The notes beneath the pieces are model-generated. The model saw only the letters and a list, made by a program, of their open reading frames with translations. It was not told the DNA's origin and did no database searches. DNA of 63,993 nt, filler included, from Octopus bimaculoides (taxonomy: Eukaryota), in the NCBI RefSeq assembly GCF_001194135.2. It is 8 parts of 5 records of this genome, joined end to end, with 100 filler letters (N's around TTAATTAATTAA, not from the genome) between each part and the next. Parts side by side here need not be neighbours in the genome. Positions count along the whole stretch, not along the records: positions 31,979 to 37,818 come from NC_068982.1; 7 more parts are not named here. The stretch is one strand, 5' to 3'. Positions 31,979 through 55,965 of this stretch are shown in pieces. Positions within the stretch are counted from its first letter, which is position 1, and every line of letters starts with the position of its first letter. A program made the translations under genes and the position numbers.

Positions 31979-32441
31979 CACCTGCATTAGTGTTTATGGT
32001 TGGTTCAGAGAGTATTTCACTTTGCCTATCAGTTACCTTAACTCTTTCAATCATTACTGTATTTTCTTCAGCCTTGGGCTGGTTTATAATTATTTCTTCT
32101 GTACTATCTTCTTTAGCTGCAGTTTCATTCTGTTTATCCTTTACTGCTTGCTTAATTTGGTCAATCTCTACTTCTGTTAGTAATTTTTTTTTCATAATGT
32201 TTCTTCTGACGTTGGCAAGTTTGTTACTGTCTATGTAGGGTCTTACTTCAAGGTGTTTCTGTCTCCAGTTTAAGTAGGTTTGTACAGTATTAGATTTATC
32301 TGTAGGGAAATATATGGCATGGTAGAAGGCTGTAAGAACTTCTTTATTATCTTCCCTAGACCATTTTTCATTTTTATTCTTTTGGTTATTTCATGACGTG
32401 CATGGATGGCCATCTGTTGGAATATTCCGGTTGTGGAGTAC

Positions 32442-32442
<1 letters not shown>
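31979..32442 (-). mobile_element. R4/Dong-type LINE ORF N-terminal region, abutting (TAA)n
   Basis: KWSREDNKEVLTAFYHA..KLANVRRNIMKKKLLTEVEIDQIK resembles the R4/Dong N-terminal KWTxEEN..LLxxxEIxxI pattern; truncated by a gap. Confidence 0.7.
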
Positions 32443-32490
<48 letters not shown>

Positions 32491-32505
32491 ATTATTATTA
32501 TTATT

Positions 32506-33100
32506 GCTTTTGCACGGCTTCTAACGCTGGAGATATACTGTGGTGTTAGCTGTTCACTACCAGTTAACTAAGGTAACACCTCTTATTTTTCGAGCACCTA
32601 TCAGGACTACCCGTTTCATAAGGGTACGTCAGGCACATGAATCACTAACAAATGTGGTGGGGGGGTGACCTAGTGATCTGATATCAAGATAAACTGCGCA
32701 CGACCTTGCAAGTGGAGCCCAGTTAAAATTTCTTTGAGGTCGAGTTGCCTATCCCACTCAAATAAGGTTGTTTAAGGATGATGATCAAAAGACCCATGTT
32801 TTCAAAAGTAAATTATCCAAACGTCAAAGAATACAGTAGTTGTATACTGTCAGCTTAATGTGACAGCAGTCACCTGAAGGGAGTAATACTACTGTTGGTT
32901 AGACCTAGGAAGCTGCACCGCTTCCTGTCGGACTTGACACATTTCTTGTGTCCTTATGTTTACAAAGGGGATACAAGCACTTCCACCCAGCTAAGCCTGC
33001 ATCCAGAGACATGTTTCTGAATCTTTGCTCGTCATCAGTCTGGAGTAGCATGACCTGCTAGTCGAAGATGCCTGTCAAGCTCTTGTAAACATACGATAAT
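32506..33100 (-). mobile_element. Non-coding element with a 5' hammerhead motif and an R4/Dong-type 3' tail
   Basis: The 3' ~65 nt match the LINE terminus at 55383-55450; (TAA)n tail at 32443-32505; no ORF seen. Confidence 0.7.
33002..33044 (-). ncRNA. Type I hammerhead ribozyme motif
   Basis: tccaga-CTGATGA-cgagcaaagattca-GAAA-CATG-TC^-tctgga: perfect 6-bp stem I, intact core, GUC triplet, palindromic stem III (ACATGT). Stem II is imperfect. Confidence 0.7.
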
Positions 33101-35354
33101 TTATAAGTTGATAGTTTGACGTTAAGACGACAGTAAAAGGTGATGATATTATGTACATTTAAGATTACTTTGAAATTGTTTACAGATTAAAATATTTTCG
33201 TGATTACATGGGCAATATTCTTTGTAGGATATGAATAGATTCTATTCGCACTAGTTTTTGAATTTCTTCTATATTTTAGTTTCCTTATATCTGGGAGAGG
33301 TATTATTATTTTTGTTATTATTATCATTTGAAACAGTTTGATGAGCTCCATGAGACTTAACGCTTCACAAGCTTCTAAGAGTAATCCGGCTCACTCAGTC
33401 TCAGATTACCGAATACCGATAATCTGTGATTGAATCAGCCGAGTGTCTGCTAGAAATCTGCAAAACCTTAAAACGCATGGAGCTGAATGAAACTGAAAAT
33501 AATATGTGAATCCGACGAAATGTGTTGAGATAGGTCGGTCGGTTGGTCGGGTAGGTAGGTAGGTAGGTAGGTAGATAGGTGGGTAGGAATACGCATACAC
33601 ACACACAATGGATAAACATCTTAATGTTCAAATGATTCATCTCTCGATAGCAAAGCGTGTTAACTTAAAATTTTTAAATTCTTTATTCTCTTCAAAATAT
33701 TGGAAATATATTTTCGTTTTAGTTGAGCATGTGTACTTGCTAATGTAATTGTGTGGATGTGTCTAGCATAATACAAGTGAGAATCACTGCTTTAAATGTT
33801 TTGAATAAAGGATAATATTCCAATGTAGAAAATACCTCCTCTGAACTAAATCTGAAGCGAAAAATATTGCTGTATATTCTTAAATATTCAATCCCGTGGA
33901 AATAAATTAAAATATCTTTGCTAAAAGGAAACACACACATAACACATTTTCATGCTGCAGCGTAACCCTTTGTAATAACAGAATAAATGGTAAGATTCCG
34001 TAATATAAAAAGAACTCAAATATTGGCATGAATAGAAAAATGCAACGAATATCGATTTTCAGAATATTTATTTACTGACATAGTTGCTGTAATTGACAAG
34101 ATATTTGCTGTAAAAGTGATTCGTATTGGATATTGATATTTTCATGGCGATCGTTTATTTTTTTGTTGTGATTTTTCTTTCTGCATTACCAGCAATCACT
34201 TTCTGCTACCTTCGCAGATATTTTAGTTGTACTTAGCTCTACCAATGATCAATAAGTCTATATGAAGAAGAACGCCTTGTTCCATTCTGTGCTAATGTAT
34301 AAAATAATAGAAATGCAACATATGATTTTGTTCAGTACAACTTTCCTATAGATTAGTTTCCTTGAAGTAACTCAAGAATCTAGTTGTGATTGGTTTAGAC
34401 GTAAACCCAAACGAGGAATCTGCCGGCCGCACACTAGCATTAATAGCTGTACAATTGATAATGCATTATATGTAATACTTTGCCTGAGTTTCGTTCAAGC
34501 ATGCAACTCGCAATTATAGGGCAACTCAATACATTGAGAGATATCCGATGGGGAGAAAATATGAAAAAGAAGGTAATAGCATCACTTATATTCTCCGAAT
34601 GCCAAGAGAGTGTGCACGCTTCGATCGATTGCCTACTGCATTTTTTGCTTTATTCGTTCAAACGTGGGTCAGATAAAAGCATTAGCCTTACATATGCCAA
34701 CTCATACCAACACGCAGAAATATTAATCATGTGAATATAAGAAATTTTTACTTTGGATAAGTGTTTTTATAGAACTATACACAAAAGATGAGTGATATGA
34801 AAGTGGTTACGGAAAGCAAACAAGAAATGCAACGGTTCAGAAAGACTTCGAAACTTTTTTTTGTTTTATGTCAATCGTAGACTTGTCGTATAAAGAGAAC
34901 ACTGAGCTTAATTAATAAAATATTCATGTAAACTATGCATATATTTCATGGAACATAACCAAACTTTTAGTTATATAGCAATGTTTACTCTTTCCTTGTT
35001 TCTGATTTCTCTACCGCTTTCTTATGGCGATTCTTGTTTATTTTTAAGCCATGTAACAGCTCTAAGTTAGTAATCATACAATAAACTGCTATTTATTTCT
35101 TTTTATAAGGTAAAATATGTTGTTGAAATATGAGACATACTTTCATTTTCTTTTAAACAACCATAGTGGTCGACTGCTTACTGGCATGCTAAATGCTCTA
35201 TGTTGACCATCAATATACGAATATCCAATACTTATTTTTTTCCTTTTATAGACAATCACCGGATCAGGTCTACACAACTTCTAAGCATATATATATATAT
35301 ATATACATATTCTGTTTTTCTTCCTCCGTTTTTCCCTTCTTTGGACTTTCTTTG

Positions 35355-35388
35355 TTTCCGACGAAGAGCTCCGCTCGAAACGTCATAT
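35355..35388 (+). ncRNA. Minimal Penelope-type hammerhead-like motif (U4C variant)
   Basis: CCGACGA-a-GAGC-tcc-GCTC-GAAA-CG-TC^; weak stem I; embedded in a PLE-like tail also seen at ~9340-9420. Confidence 0.45.
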
Positions 35389-35591
35389 TCGCTTTCATTC
35401 TTTTCCCGAGCGTCTAGGATCACAGTCTGTATCACGTCCTCACGTTGTTGTTTTTTTGTTGTTGTTTCTTGTCTTTTTCCTTTTTTGAACTATATATATA
35501 TATATATATATGCATGTATATAGATACAGAAATATATGAATATATATATATATACATATACATATATTACATATATNNNNNNNNNNNNNNN

Positions 35592-35627
<36 letters not shown>

Positions 35628-35964
35628 GACGGACTTCTTTCAAATTCTGTCTGCCAAATTTACTCATAAGGCTTTGCTAGGCCCGAGACTACAGTAGAGG
35701 ACGTTTCTGTGTTTGTGTTAGTGTGTTTAGGGATATATAACACAGTACCCTCTCAGAAACATATACACATATGCATGATAAGCGAAATAATAACGTATAT
35801 TCTAGAAATAGGAGAACTATTGGAATGACTAACGCATGCAACTAACTTTAACTGAAATAAGTTAAACGCTCTTCTCAGGCGTTAAGTTAGAATTTTTTAT
35901 ATTCCTGACTATTGCGCAACTAACTTAATCCCCAGTTTCATGATGATGATGATGATGATGATGT

Positions 35965-36012
<48 letters not shown>

Positions 36013-36449
36013 CGGCGATCATCATCATCATCGTCATCGTCATCATCATCATCATCATCATCATCAACATCAACATCATGAACATAAGCATCATCATAAT
36101 CATCAACAACAAAAACAACAACAAAAACAGCATTATTGCATTTATTTCAGTAAACATTTCATACATGCATTTACACCCGTCAAAAGAGCGAATAATCGAT
36201 CACTTTGATAACGTGTGTTTTTTTGGAATGTGTGATGAGTTTCATTATTATATTGCAAGTGCTATATATTTTCTCAGTCCCCTCTGCTTAGTGGAGCTAT
36301 TTATCTATATTGTGTGTGTATAATTGGTGTTCTTTCCGCTATATATTAATTGCATCTAATGCAGCATCTGTTGTCGTTGAAATCGTTAATGTTTTCCCTC
36401 CTCACACACAGTTTCCTCATTTGTAGTTGGAATTGTGAATCTATTGACT

Positions 36450-37000
36450 CTGGGATTTAAAATTCTTTTAGCATTTGACTCCGTTGTAATTGATATATCG
36501 AACAGAGAACATTTATTTTGCTCATAGCTTTGACAATAGCGTCTGATCAATTTACCTTAATCCTATTGTATGTATTAATTGACATGTTCTTCAGTTTGCT
36601 CACATTGTCATTATCTTATTACATTCTGGTGTTTGTAACATCTGTCTGTTTTCTTTTACTCTTTCATATTACAGACACATTTTGCAATGTGTGAAAGTCT
36701 CAAATTTGTAATATATCAATATATTCTGCAGTTGCTACAACTAATGAACCTCAAAAATGTAATTCTCCATCAATCTATGGCTTCGTGTGTAGTGCAGATA
36801 CTGTTATTCACTTTGTCTCAATATTTTGTAGTTTCAGTTTACTCTGCGTTGGCACTGTACGACAACCAATTTCGTTGGTCCCAGTATAGCGACTATTAAT
36901 TTTCAGGTACTACAGACTTTATCCATTTTCTTTTTCTTCATTGTTCACAGTACGTTGTGATAATCACCACTATATTCAGGTCTTCTCCTGCTCAGGATAC
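36450..37000 (-). mobile_element. Highly degenerate R4/Dong-type LINE C-terminal fragment
   Basis: VATAEY resembles LAPTEY, and IKVN*SDAIV resembles IKANRPDIIV. Confidence 0.45.
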
Positions 37001-37965
37001 GAGTATCTGGCAGGGAACACATTTAACAGTCAAGTATGTTGGTGAAGATGTATGGAATTCGGAGAAAAGTTGACCGTTAGATGTGTGAACATGCCTTGAT
37101 ACTGAATCATACAGTGCCTTGCCGAAATATTCAATATAATGTGTTCCTCCAAAATACATACTGGACATTAGGAGATTAACAGTGTAAATTGGAAATAAAT
37201 TGACAGAAGGCAACATAGAACCATTGTGGTATCACTGCGGCAATAGTTTGATAAGTTCTTACATGGCAGTTCGTAACCACTATAGTACATTTTTTTCTGC
37301 CTAGATAGTATGGGATGTTGCGCTTTGTGTGTGTTGCGTGGCATGTTTTGAAATATAGATACTAGTGTCTCTCTGTGCTTTTGAAATAAATATCAGTTGT
37401 AACTGTGGTGTAGTTTTTAACTGACATTATGTCATGAAATGTGTAATTCTATGTTGCTCAATTCTCTTGTGTATTTGAGATTCGGGTGTAGATTGTTGAG
37501 ATGGGTGCTGCATTCTTCCAGATTTTCTAAGGGTATGGTCCAAATTAGGAAATAACCATCGCGGTATTTTTCCATGTGTCCTCTATACACCTTCTAAAGA
37601 TCGTGGCGTATTTTCTTCAATTATTTCATATAGGTTTTGTTGCAAATATCCAAGTATATATATATAGGTGTAAGAGTGGCTGTGTGGTAAGTAGCTTGCT
37701 TACGAACCGCATGGTTCCGGGTTCAGTCCCACTGCGTGACAACTTGGGAAAGTTTCTTCTAATATAGCGTCGAGCCGACCAAAGCCTTATGAGTGGATTT
37801 GGTAGACAGAAACTGAAANNNNNNNNNNNNNNNNNNNNNNNNNNNNNNNNNNNNNNNNNNNNTTAATTAATTAANNNNNNNNNNNNNNNNNNNNNNNNNN
37901 NNNNNNNNNNNNNNNNNNATATGTTTTTAATTGATATTAGCCCTTGTGGCCAATAAAACGAATTA

Positions 37966-55382: not shown

Positions 55383-55965
55383 GCCTTTGCACAGCTTCTA
55401 ACGCTGGAGATGTACTACGGTGTCAGCTATCCACTACCAGTGAACTAAGAGTTTTGAGCACCATCGAGAGTATTCGAGCGGTTCCCAGCAGTGCTGTTTT
55501 CTTCAAGTGCTCCACCCTTATTACAGCCCCTATTTGTTCCACGTACTTCACAAGATTTTTACTCACTGTCCCCAGGGCTCCGACAATTATTGGTACTACT
55601 GCTACCTGTTTCATCGACCACAACTGCTTAACCTCCCAAGCTAACCTGTTATACCTCTCGAATTTTCTTTCTTCCTTATCGCATACCTTGTTGTCAGCTG
55701 GACATGCTATATCTATGATCTAGCATTGTTTGTTTTCTTTCTCAATTAACTTATGTCTGGTTTGCTATTCACTGTCTCAAGGTTGCACTGAATCATAAAA
55801 TCCCACAGAATATTTGCATTATCATTTTCGATGATGCCTTTGGGTTTATGATTGTACCACTTTTCTACTGTCAAGTTCACACTTGTTATAAAGTGTCCAA
55901 TGGACAATCCTTGCTATGTTGTCATGACGCCTTTTATATTCTTTCTGGGCTAGTGGCGTACATAC
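55383..55965 (-). mobile_element. 5'-truncated R4/Dong-type LINE (RLE endonuclease domain and 3' UTR) within a (TAA)n tract
   Basis: AQKEYKRRHDNIARIVHW..IIDIACPADNKV..RYNRLAWEVKQLW..VPIIVGALG..KKTALLGTARIL; TTA tracts at 55341-55382 and 55966-56005. Confidence 0.9.

What the first reader, a model, noticed from the sequence alone, without database searches (positions are those of the whole stretch)
31979..33100. Hammerhead-capped non-autonomous retroelement using an R4/Dong LINE tail (best candidate for an undescribed system)
Seen: a ~600-nt ORF-less minus-strand unit with a type I hammerhead near its 5' end (33044-33002; perfect tccaga/tctgga stem I, GUC site, predicted cut between 33008 and 33007). 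Its last ~65 nt (tagtgaacagctaacaccacagtatatctccagcgttagaagccgtgcaaaagc) match the 3' terminus of the RLE LINE at 55383-55450, followed by (TAA)n. The N-terminal ORF region of an R4/Dong element lies directly after that tract. Known: site-specific RLE LINEs such as R2 use 5' HDV-like ribozymes to release their RNA, whereas hammerheads are typical of Penelope elements and retrozymes. Inference: a Pol III-independent, ribozyme-processed parasite of a (TAA)n-targeting LINE, or alternatively a Dong lineage whose 5' UTR carries a hammerhead and a terminal repeat.
Basis: partly seen in the sequence, partly recalled or inferred. Interest (0 to 1): 0.8.

Follow-up and report, generated by a model that had tools for sequence, protein, structure and literature searches.

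The report
Retrozyme-type hammerhead beside a TAA repeat
A convincing self-cleaving "hammerhead" RNA motif of the kind carried by small animal retroelements sits in a 0.6-0.8 kb non-coding segment that ends in a long TAA repeat, but whether that segment is a mobile parasite of a TAA-targeting LINE could not be tested from this single copy.

Summary
The hammerhead is real at the sequence level. At 33044-33002 (minus strand) all core boxes, a perfect 6-bp helix I and a GUC site predict a cut between 33008 and 33007. A covariance model built only from four published, bench-tested retrozyme hammerheads finds exactly this site (27.4 bits, E about 1e-6; next best 7 bits). Rfam's own hammerhead models are silent. 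Helix III is identical to axolotl Ax330, a type that cuts efficiently only as a dimer. Helix II is weak, with C.A at 10.1/11.1. The motif caps a 139-nt hairpin (z = -3.2).

The segment has no ORF or protein remnant. It ends in (TAA)21, and a decayed (TAA)9 lies upstream. The shared LINE tail and the Dong identity of the downstream ORF could not be checked, and no other copy was reachable.

In a type I hammerhead the catalytic core lies 5' of the cut, so a cleaved RNA loses the ribozyme. It cannot be a heritable 5' cap like the HDV-like ribozymes of R2 and Dong.

Best reading: one copy of a composite non-autonomous retroposon with a retrozyme-derived head and a TAA tail, or a relic of one. Moderate interest.

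The parts
33301..33328 (-). Degenerate (TAA)n tract, about 9 copies at 80% purity. It may be the upstream half of a TAA target microsatellite. Membership is uncertain.
   Evidence: TRF; the repeat finder family D3
33094..33300 (-). AT-rich 207-nt stretch (GC 0.23-0.28) between the upstream TAA tract and the hammerhead hairpin. It is either the 5' part of the element or plain flank.
   Evidence: composition profile; no ORF or domain
32955..33093 (-). 139-nt hairpin domain with the hammerhead at its apex. Helix I is extended by an internal loop (UAC opposite U), a 3-bp distal helix and further pairing, closed by an 11-bp perfect inverted repeat (33093-33083 with 32965-32955).
   Evidence: fold (MFE -51.3 kcal/mol, z = -3.24, 0 of 200 shuffles as stable); inverted repeat I2
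33002..33044 (-). Type I hammerhead motif. Helix I is 33044-33039 with 33007-33002. CUGAUGA is 33038-33032. Helix II is 33031-33028 with 33021-33018 (C.A, G-C, A-U, G.U). Loop 2 CAAAGA is 33027-33022. GAAA is 33017-33014. Helix III with its loop, ACAUGU, is 33014-33009. C17 is 33008.
   Evidence: model R1 hit of 27.4 bits, E 1.3e-6, full length
33007..33008 (-). Predicted self-cleavage site, after C33008. The 3' product would begin with U33007 (UCUGGAUGCAGG...).
   Evidence: Position of the GUC triplet relative to helix I. In the constructs of PMC7229834 Supplementary Table 2 the cut falls after GUC/GUA and before the 3' strand of helix I.
32506..32954 (-). GC-richer non-coding body (GC 0.35-0.49).
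   Evidence: no ORF, homologue or domain; folding not unusual
32442..32505 (-). (TAA)21 tract, 96% pure, directly after the body. It could be the 3' tail of the element, the target microsatellite, or both.
   Evidence: TRF
31979..32441 (-). Start of a different downstream element. It has a 246-nt leader (with a 47-aa upstream ORF) and then an ORF, MKKKLLTEVEIDQ..., from 32195 to the edge of the piece (72 aa seen).
   Evidence: No homologue, no Pfam domain, no similarity to the hammerhead segment, no HDV-like ribozyme detected.

Best explanation
The segment is one genomic copy of a composite, non-coding retroposon. Its 5' domain is a retrozyme-class, dimer-type type I hammerhead held at the tip of a 139-nt hairpin. 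Its 3' end is a LINE-style tail followed by (TAA)n.

Integration (inferred). It was most likely inserted into a TAA microsatellite by target-primed reverse transcription, using the enzyme of a TAA-specific LINE. The neighbouring element starts immediately after the same TAA tract, as expected when such elements pile into one target.

What the hammerhead can and cannot do (shown from the anatomy). It cannot serve as a heritable monomeric 5' cap. Its catalytic core lies upstream of the cut, and its helix III needs a second copy.

What it may do if still active (inferred). It would cut only paired or multimeric transcripts, for example read-through across head-to-tail arrays that TAA targeting naturally creates. 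That would release unit-length RNAs in the retrozyme manner, possibly circularised by a tRNA ligase. In this particular copy it may already be weakened, because positions 10.1/11.1 form C.A.

Shown: the motif, the hairpin, the TAA tracts, and the absence of coding capacity. Inferred: mobilisation by a LINE, existence of a family, and ribozyme activity.
For: Hammerhead:
- Full match to a model built from four bench-tested retrozyme hammerheads that excludes the candidate (27.4 bits, E 1.3e-6, next best 7 bits).
- Features outside my descriptor also match published ribozymes. GAAAC-AU-GUC is identical to axolotl Ax330, and loop 2 is CAAAGA against CAAAAA. The UAC/U internal loop lies exactly 6 bp from the core, as in the Schistosoma Sm1-derived N79 ribozyme, whose loop 2 is CAAAUA.
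- The architecture fits the published description of canonical metazoan hammerheads: helix I 6 bp, helix II 4 bp, helix III 1-2 bp with a 2-4 nt palindromic loop (PMC4209133).
- A non-Watson-Crick 10.1/11.1 pair (U.U) occurs in the cleaving Ax353.
- The chance rate is about 2e-3 per window before counting these extra features.

Surroundings:
- The hairpin is unusually stable.
- Two copies are predicted to pair through ACAUGU.
- A long, pure (TAA)21 follows the body in the same orientation as the ribozyme. A decayed TAA tract lies upstream, and GC content steps at the base of the hairpin.
- There is no ORF, homologue or domain.
- In Bombyx Dong the sense strand follows (TAA)n, the orientation seen here (primer sequence in PMC3774820).

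Precedents: SINE-like Sm-alpha and Sj-alpha elements carry hammerheads (PMC2770079). R2 SIDEs combine a ribozyme with the LINE 3' UTR (PMC3774820).
Against: - Only one copy could be examined. No other copy was found in any reachable collection, so family status, boundaries and conservation of the core are untested.
- The claimed tail identity with a LINE lies outside the piece.
- Rfam's hammerhead models give nothing.
- Helix II is weak.
- There is no second hammerhead or tandem repeat within 5.8 kb.
- The tail and the whole module fold no better than shuffles.
- TAA microsatellites are common in AT-rich genomes, so the flanks could be coincidental.
Confidence: 0.42

Rival explanations
1. Relic mosaic. 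A fragment of an ordinary hammerhead retrozyme, or of a Penelope-like element's flanking repeat, decayed in place and merely lies next to a TAA microsatellite that later received a LINE. There is no composite family, and the ribozyme has no current function.
For: - Single hammerhead with no tandem partner.
- C.A at 10.1/11.1 and only 3 bp in helix II.
- Rfam is silent.
- Only the hairpin, not the rest of the module, is structurally unusual.
- Penelope-like elements and retrozymes are the documented carriers of such motifs, and Penelope-like elements favour microsatellite targets (PMC4209133, PMC7229834, PMC8557442).
Against: - The GC-richer module runs uninterrupted from the base of the hairpin to the TAA tract.
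- The tract is long and pure and lies on the 3' side in the ribozyme's orientation.
- No reverse transcriptase or GIY-YIG remnant of a Penelope-like element lies nearby on that strand.
Confidence: 0.28
2. A non-autonomous element whose 5' hammerhead cuts its RNA out of read-through transcripts as a monomer. The cleaved RNA, starting at UCUGGA, is then copied by a Dong-type LINE.
For: The motif is genuine and lies near the 5' end of the GC-richer module. The TAA tail is present. R2 SIDEs show that the combination of ribozyme and LINE tail exists.
Against: - The core lies 5' of the cut, so the processed RNA loses the ribozyme and its copies could not inherit it.
- This copy retains the core and upstream sequence.
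- Helix III cannot form in a monomer (2-nt loop). The identical Ax330 type cuts poorly as a monomer.
- Known R4 and Dong elements use HDV-like ribozymes that stay with the 3' product.
Confidence: 0.12
3. One element. The hammerhead segment, the internal (TAA)n and the downstream ORF together form the 5' region of a single LINE, that is, a Dong lineage with a hammerhead in its 5' UTR.
For: All parts lie on the same strand and are contiguous.
Against: - A 64-nt pure microsatellite would lie inside a UTR.
- The two parts share no similarity, so there is no terminal repeat.
- The downstream ORF has no detectable LINE homology.
- Documented Dong and R4 5' ends begin directly after (TAA)n with an HDV-like ribozyme.
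Confidence: 0.05
4. Chance resemblance. The boxes and the inverted repeat arose at random, and there is no evolutionary hammerhead.
For: Rfam finds nothing at E<=10. The 58-nt core folds no better than shuffles. A relaxed descriptor predicts on the order of 100 chance hits per 2.7-Gb genome if helix II is ignored. The first stage may have read many windows.
Against: - 27.4 bits against an independent model, with the next best hit at 7 bits.
- No shuffle hit had a 6-bp helix I.
- Agreement with published ribozymes in loop 1, loop 2 and helix III, none of which the descriptor used.
- The extended hairpin has z = -3.2.
Confidence: 0.07

Closest known systems
Metazoan non-LTR retrozymes (type I hammerhead repeats of coral, mussel and axolotl; Cervera and de la Pena 2020, PMC7229834)
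   Same: Same ribozyme class and architecture: 6-bp helix I, a 4-position helix II with a 6-nt A-rich loop, and a very short palindromic helix III. GAAACAUGUC is identical to axolotl Ax330. The sequence is non-coding with moderate to low GC.
   Different: Retrozymes are 170-400 bp units in tandem arrays without a microsatellite tail. Here there is one hammerhead in a 590-795 nt segment that ends in (TAA)21, with no tandem copy within 5.8 kb.
Sm-alpha / Sj-alpha SINE-like retroposons of schistosomes (hammerhead-bearing; PMC2770079 citing Ferbeyre 1998 and Laha 2000)
   Same: A dispersed, non-coding, SINE-like element that carries a canonical type I hammerhead. The Sm1-derived N79 ribozyme shares the UAC/U internal loop 6 bp from the core, and its loop 2 is CAAAUA against CAAAGA here.
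   Different: Sm-alpha has a tRNA-derived head. Here ARAGORN finds no tRNA, and there is only an A-box-like string at chance level. No TAA tail is described for Sm-alpha in the text read here.
R2 SIDEs (short internally deleted elements; Eickbush and Eickbush 2012, as summarised in PMC3774820)
   Different: SIDEs use an HDV-like ribozyme, which cuts at its own 5' edge and therefore stays with the element. A type I hammerhead is lost from the 3' product. SIDEs derive from the LINE itself, whereas this segment shows no similarity to the adjacent element.
Dong / R4 clade LINEs (TAA-specific Dong of Bombyx mori)
   Same: The sense strand is preceded and followed by (TAA)n, and elements cluster at one microsatellite.
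   Different: No reverse transcriptase or endonuclease is visible in the piece. Documented Dong and R4 5' ends carry HDV-like ribozymes (PMC3774820), and none was detected here.
Hammerheads in the flanking repeats of Penelope-like elements (PMC4209133, PMC8557442)
   Same: Dimer-type hammerheads with a minimal, palindromic helix III, associated with retroelements. These elements show an insertion bias for microsatellites.
   Different: Penelope-type minimal hammerheads usually have a longer helix II (6-8 bp), a shorter helix I and an extra base before 10.1 with a G-C closing pair. No reverse transcriptase or GIY-YIG remnant lies nearby.

Membership tests
Hammerhead ribozyme, type I (canonical metazoan / retrozyme class) | Conserved core boxes CUGANGA and GAAA, and an RUH cleavage triplet, in the right order and spacing | tested here: met
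   CUGAUGA 33038-33032, GAAA 33017-33014, GUC 33010-33008
Hammerhead ribozyme, type I (canonical metazoan / retrozyme class) | Helix I formed by the two flanks (open end), about 6 bp, followed by an internal loop and a closing stem | tested here: met
   6 Watson-Crick bp, a UAC/U internal loop, a 3-bp distal helix and further pairing. None of 3335 shuffle hits had a 6-bp helix I.
Hammerhead ribozyme, type I (canonical metazoan / retrozyme class) | Helix II of about 4 bp, closed by a 10.1-11.1 base pair (usually G-C) | tested here: inconclusive
   C.A at 10.1/11.1, then G-C, A-U, G.U. The published, cleaving Ax353 has U.U there, so this does not disqualify the motif, but it is not the norm (PMC4209133).
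Hammerhead ribozyme, type I (canonical metazoan / retrozyme class) | Short helix III (1-2 bp) with a small palindromic loop, allowing a dimeric active form | tested here: met
   ACAUGU is a perfect palindrome identical to Ax330. The cofold of two copies pairs it between molecules.
Hammerhead ribozyme, type I (canonical metazoan / retrozyme class) | Significant score against a covariance model of known members | tested here: inconclusive
   My model from four published retrozyme hammerheads gives 27.4 bits, E 1.3e-6. The Rfam 15 hammerhead families give no hit at E<=10, even on 131 nt. The two results disagree and the reason is unknown.
Hammerhead ribozyme, type I (canonical metazoan / retrozyme class) | Self-cleavage at the predicted site | not testable with these tools
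   Needs transcription assays of monomer and dimer constructs
Non-LTR retrozyme | Tandem repeats of a 170-400 bp unit, each with a hammerhead | tested here: not met
   One hammerhead and no tandem or direct repeat of the segment in 5.8 kb
Non-LTR retrozyme | [quoted passage not shown] | not testable with these tools
   No transcriptome access
LINE-dependent non-autonomous retroposon (SINE / SIDE-like) | 3' tail shared with a partner LINE | not testable with these tools
The quoted tail is present at 32559-32506.
LINE-dependent non-autonomous retroposon (SINE / SIDE-like) | Terminal simple repeat matching the LINE's target or tail | tested here: met
   (TAA)21 at 32442-32505, directly 3' of the body
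LINE-dependent non-autonomous retroposon (SINE / SIDE-like) | No coding capacity | tested here: met
   Longest ORFs are 48-54 aa. A six-frame search found no homologue at E<=1. No Pfam domain.
LINE-dependent non-autonomous retroposon (SINE / SIDE-like) | Multi-copy family with defined ends | not testable with these tools
   No animal genome can be searched by DNA here. Scans of the metagenome, prokaryote-genome and viral collections, and the protein look-ups, returned nothing. These collections are not expected to hold this genome, so the negatives say little.
LINE-dependent non-autonomous retroposon (SINE / SIDE-like) | Internal Pol III promoter (tRNA-type A and B boxes), for the SINE subtype only | tested here: not met
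   No tRNA-like gene. One A-box-like string with 1 mismatch at 32993-32983, at chance frequency, and no B box at the right distance.
Dong / R4 LINE (for the downstream element 32441-31979) | Reverse transcriptase and restriction-like endonuclease domains | not testable with these tools
   The ORF is cut by the edge of the piece after 72 aa
Dong / R4 LINE (for the downstream element 32441-31979) | Detectable homology of the N-terminal region | tested here: not met
   No homologue by word-indexed search; no Pfam domain
Dong / R4 LINE (for the downstream element 32441-31979) | 5' HDV-like ribozyme cutting at the junction with (TAA)n | tested here: inconclusive
   No Rfam hit. A naive search found no 7-bp P1/P1' pairing in the 460 nt available. 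These ribozymes are very variable in sequence (PMC3774820).
Dong / R4 LINE (for the downstream element 32441-31979) | Sense strand immediately preceded by (TAA)n | tested here: met
   ...AATAATAATAG|TACTCCACAACC at 32442/32441. The orientation is the same as at the Bombyx Dong 5' junction (primer in PMC3774820).

The most novel reading that the evidence does not exclude
A retrozyme that has switched partners. In this reading, head-to-tail arrays created by TAA-targeted insertion are transcribed, and the dimer-type hammerheads cut out unit-length RNAs that contain the LINE tail and (UAA)n internally. These RNAs are circularised, then copied by a TAA-specific restriction-like-endonuclease LINE priming on the (UAA)n. 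Each new copy would then be flanked by (TAA)n and would keep an intact hammerhead. This would be the first hammerhead retrozyme tied to a LINE rather than to Penelope-like elements, and the first hammerhead in the R2/R4/Dong world, where only HDV-like ribozymes are known.
Probability: 0.12. Interest if true: 0.75.

Novelty: new variant of a known kind. Interest (0 to 1): 0.45.

Why it matters
Animal hammerhead retrozymes are currently thought to depend on Penelope-like elements. Site-specific LINEs of the R2/R4/Dong group are known to use HDV-like ribozymes. A retrozyme-class hammerhead fused to a TAA-LINE tail would link the two systems, and would show that hammerhead modules can be recruited by a different reverse-transcription machinery. 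It would also add cephalopod-like genomes to the hosts of canonical type I hammerheads; I found no paper in the library reporting that.

One practical point stands whatever the outcome. Rfam's hammerhead models missed a motif that a four-sequence retrozyme model scores at 27 bits, so Rfam-based annotation probably under-counts this class.

Tried and rejected
1. Rfam at E<=10 on the whole piece and on 131 nt gave no hammerhead family. I kept this as evidence against the motif, but it is outweighed by the independent model.
2. A plain MFE fold of the 58-nt core is not more stable than shuffles. This is uninformative, because the active fold needs a dimer.
3. I searched for other copies in several ways. 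These were the 72-aa ORF, exact look-ups of the 48-aa and 47-aa ORFs, a concatenated six-frame translation of the segment and leader, and exact-pattern scans of the metagenome, prokaryote-genome and viral collections for the tail and the hammerhead. All were empty. These collections are unlikely to hold this animal genome's non-genic DNA, so nothing about copy number follows.
4. I tested the terminal-repeat idea with local alignments of the segment against the downstream element and against the rest of the piece. Scores were no better than shuffles, so I rejected it.
5. I tested whether the segment is the 3' end of a 5'-truncated LINE with ORF remains. No Pfam domain was found in any minus-strand frame from 35577 to 32506. 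A copy made only of 3' UTR cannot be excluded.
6. A tRNA-derived SINE head was rejected.
7. An HDV-like ribozyme at either candidate 5' junction was not found. This is inconclusive.
8. The tail and the whole module are not unusually stable when folded.
9. MAFFT misaligned the 3' half whenever the N79 ribozyme or the candidate was included. Only alignment A2 was used for the model.
10. A literature search for the SINE sequence, meant to identify the organism, found nothing.
Full report
SCOPE. Only the piece 31979-37818 was available. All features of the finding lie on the minus strand.

1. WHAT IS THERE. Reading the minus strand from high to low coordinates, the layout is:
- a degenerate (TAA)n, about 9 units at 80% purity (33328-33301);
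- an AT-rich stretch of 207 nt (33300-33094, GC 0.23-0.28);
- a GC-richer non-coding module of 588 nt (33093-32506, GC 0.35-0.49);
- a long, pure (TAA)21 (32505-32442, 96%);
- the start of another element (32441-31979), with a 246-nt leader and an ORF, MKKKLLTEVEIDQ..., cut by the edge of the piece after 72 aa.

The GC step coincides with the base of the hairpin described in section 3. With one copy I cannot decide between them.

2. THE HAMMERHEAD IS REAL AT THE SEQUENCE LEVEL.

The motif. 33044-33002 reads UCCAGA-CUGAUGA-CGAG-CAAAGA-UUCA-GAAAC-AU-GUC-UCUGGA. The predicted cut is between C33008 and U33007.

Chance. I wrote a deliberately relaxed descriptor: CUGANGA, 6-40 nt, GAAA, a helix III of at least 2 bp, then U and H. 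In the piece it finds two core strings, and only this one has a helix I. In 6000 dinucleotide-preserving shuffles (70 Mb) there were 3335 core hits, or 0.56 per piece. Helix I length fell by about 0.27 per added base pair, and no hit reached 6 Watson-Crick pairs. Extrapolating gives about 3e-4 per piece and about 2e-3 per 38-kb window. It also gives on the order of 100 chance hits in a 2.7-Gb genome when helix II is ignored, so the descriptor alone is not proof.

An independent test. Supplementary Table 2 of PMC7229834 prints four retrozyme constructs that were assayed for self-cleavage: coral Amil224, mussel Mg353, and axolotl Ax353 and Ax330. I aligned only their hammerheads (A2) and built a covariance model with the textbook structure (R1). 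I then searched the whole piece on both strands with the filters off. The model finds exactly 33044-33002 on the minus strand, full length, at 27.4 bits and E about 1.3e-6. The calibration is rough. The next best hit scores 7.0 bits.

Features no descriptor asked for.
- GAAAC-AU-GUC is identical to Ax330.
- Loop 2 is CAAAGA, against CAAAAA in Ax330.
- A UAC bulge opposite a single U lies exactly six pairs from the core, followed by a distal helix. The Schistosoma Sm1-derived N79 ribozyme has the same arrangement (...GCAGG-TAC-ATCCAG-CTGATGA-GTCC-CAAATA-GGAC-GAAAC...GTC-CTGGAT-T-CC...; PMC12550524).
- PMC4209133 describes canonical metazoan hammerheads as having a 6-bp helix I, a 4-bp helix II, and a helix III of 1-2 bp capped by a 2-4 nt palindromic loop. 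This is the anatomy seen here.

Weak points.
- Helix II is C.A, G-C, A-U, G.U. The 10.1/11.1 pair, normally G-C, is a mismatch. Ax353 carries U.U at that position and still cleaves, so this does not disqualify the motif, but the copy may be impaired.
- Rfam 15 reports no hammerhead family at E<=10, either on the piece or on a 131-nt slice. I cannot explain this disagreement and list it as evidence against.

3. CONTEXT OF THE RIBOZYME.

The hairpin. Helix I continues outward into a long imperfect stem, closed by an 11-bp perfect inverted repeat (33093-33083 with 32965-32955). The hammerhead therefore caps a 139-nt hairpin. That domain is more stable than all 200 shuffles (z = -3.24). The tail (z = -0.13), the 588-nt module (z = -1.1) and the 795-nt span (z = -1.5) are unremarkable.

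Helix III needs a partner. It would be A-U and C-G around a 2-nt loop. That is sterically impossible for the inner pair, so a monomer has effectively one pair. ACAUGU is a perfect palindrome, and a cofold of two copies pairs it between the molecules. The identical axolotl type shows weak self-cleavage as a monomer and efficient cleavage as a dimer (PMC7229834). There is no second hammerhead and no tandem or direct repeat of the segment in the 5.8 kb.

4. WHAT THE SEGMENT IS NOT.
- It is not coding. The longest ORFs are 48-54 aa. A six-frame translation has no homologue at E<=1. There is no Pfam domain in any minus-strand frame from 35577 to 32506.
- It is not a tRNA-derived SINE.
- It is not a repeat of the downstream element, so there is no terminal repeat.
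- It is not a classical retrozyme array.

5. WHAT COULD NOT BE TESTED. No tool here searches animal genomes by DNA. Protein-indexed look-ups and exact-pattern scans of the metagenome, prokaryote-genome and viral collections all returned nothing. Those collections are not expected to contain this DNA, so the negatives carry no weight on copy number.

Four things therefore remain open: the shared LINE tail, family size, the distribution of 5' ends, and conservation or covariation of the core. The Dong/R4 identity of the downstream ORF is also unverified. It has no homologue and no domain, and no HDV-like ribozyme was detected. Its position directly after (TAA)n in the sense orientation does match the published Bombyx Dong 5' junction (PMC3774820).

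6. MECHANISM. Two facts visible in the sequence constrain any model.

First, this is a type I hammerhead. The catalytic strand (33038-33014) is 5' of the cut, so the 3' product begins at UCUGGA and carries only one strand of helix I. HDV-like ribozymes differ. They cut at their own 5' edge and stay with the element, which is how R2, R4, Dong and the R2 SIDEs use them (PMC3774820). An element that retrotransposed from an RNA cut by this hammerhead could not pass the ribozyme on. The copy here retains the core and at least 49 nt upstream of it.

Second, the ribozyme is built to work in pairs.

They point to the retrozyme logic, in which cleavage of multimeric transcripts at successive hammerheads yields a unit-length, permuted RNA that still contains all the sequence. 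tRNA ligase can circularise such an RNA (PMC7229834).

TAA-targeting elements insert into one another's tails and so naturally create head-to-tail arrays. The junction at 32442/32441 shows such piling-up at this locus.

My best-supported reading (0.42) is a composite non-autonomous retroposon with a retrozyme-derived hammerhead head and a LINE-type tail ending in (TAA)n. It would have been inserted by target-primed reverse transcription at a TAA microsatellite. The hammerhead would act only on paired or multimeric transcripts, or would already be decaying.

Shown: motif, hairpin, TAA tracts, absence of coding capacity. Inferred: mobilisation by a LINE, existence of a family, ribozyme activity.

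The rivals are:
- a relic mosaic (0.28);
- chance (0.07);
- a single LINE with a hammerhead in its 5' UTR (0.05).

7. COMPARISON WITH WHAT IS KNOWN. The ribozyme belongs with the canonical metazoan type I hammerheads of retrozymes and of the schistosome SINE-like Sm-alpha and Sj-alpha elements (PMC7229834; PMC2770079). A hammerhead on a short non-coding retroposon is therefore not new.

What would be new is the partner and the architecture. The copy is single and TAA-flanked with a LINE-style tail. It lies in the territory of R2/R4/Dong elements, for which only HDV-like ribozymes are documented. Animal retrozymes are currently attributed to Penelope-like elements (bioRxiv 10.64898/2026.07.22.740005; PMC8557442).

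The segment fails the defining tandem-repeat test for a retrozyme. Its defining test as a LINE-dependent element, the shared tail, could not be run. I therefore file it as a new variant of a known kind, with the caveat that it rests on one copy.

8. ORGANISM. From memory only, the tRNA-derived SINE at 37670-37818 resembles the abundant octopus SINE. A literature string search did not confirm this. I found no paper in the library reporting hammerheads in cephalopods.

VERDICT. The proposed mechanism needs correcting. The claim that would make this exciting, a hammerhead element riding a TAA-specific LINE, remains untested. Interest 0.45. The most novel surviving reading has probability about 0.12.

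Noticed in passing
window 37670-37818 (+) and 35638-35701: The head of a tRNA-derived SINE, with an A-box-like TGGCTGTGTGG at 37677 and a B-box-like GGTTCAGTCCC at 37720. It is cut by the edge of the piece. A 64-nt stretch at 35638-35701 is 80% complementary to its 3' part (37755-37818), so a second, inverted partial copy lies 2 kb away. From memory it resembles the abundant octopus SINE; this is not confirmed.
   Followed up: partly
window 35936-36113: A compound microsatellite, (ATG)n switching to (ATC)n, forms an almost perfect 82-nt-arm palindrome (88% complementary, 1 nt between the arms). It produces a crowd of spurious microRNA and snoRNA hits in Rfam at E down to 1e-11, all below the gathering scores.
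   Followed up: no
window 35578-35592: A run of 15 N (an assembly gap) inside a long (TA)n / (TATG)-like simple-repeat region (35280-35630).
   Followed up: no
window 33531-33587: A (TAGG)14 microsatellite, 81% pure, lies 200 nt beyond the upstream TAA tract.
   Followed up: no
window 33002-33044 (-): A sensitivity gap. The Rfam 15 hammerhead models give no hit at E<=10, while a covariance model built from four published retrozyme hammerheads scores the site at 27.4 bits. Rfam-based annotation may systematically miss dimer-type animal hammerheads.
   Followed up: partly
window 32071 (-), inside the downstream ORF: A second string fits CUGANGA...GAAA...UH (CTGAAGA...GAAAG AG TTA) but has no helix I. 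It is a chance core match and illustrates how common core-only hits are (0.56 expected per piece).
   Followed up: yes
window 33001-33022 (-): The 3' strand of helix I (UCUGGA) can also pair with UUCAGA, which is the 3' strand of helix II plus G12-A13. This forms a larger palindrome around ACAUGU (14-nt arms, 86% complementary). It could compete with the active fold or stabilise the dimer.
   Followed up: partly
window 32270-32413 (-): A 47-aa upstream ORF (MAIHARHEITKRIK...) lies in the 246-nt leader of the downstream element, ahead of the main ORF at 32195. Its exact sequence is not on record in the protein collection.
   Followed up: partly
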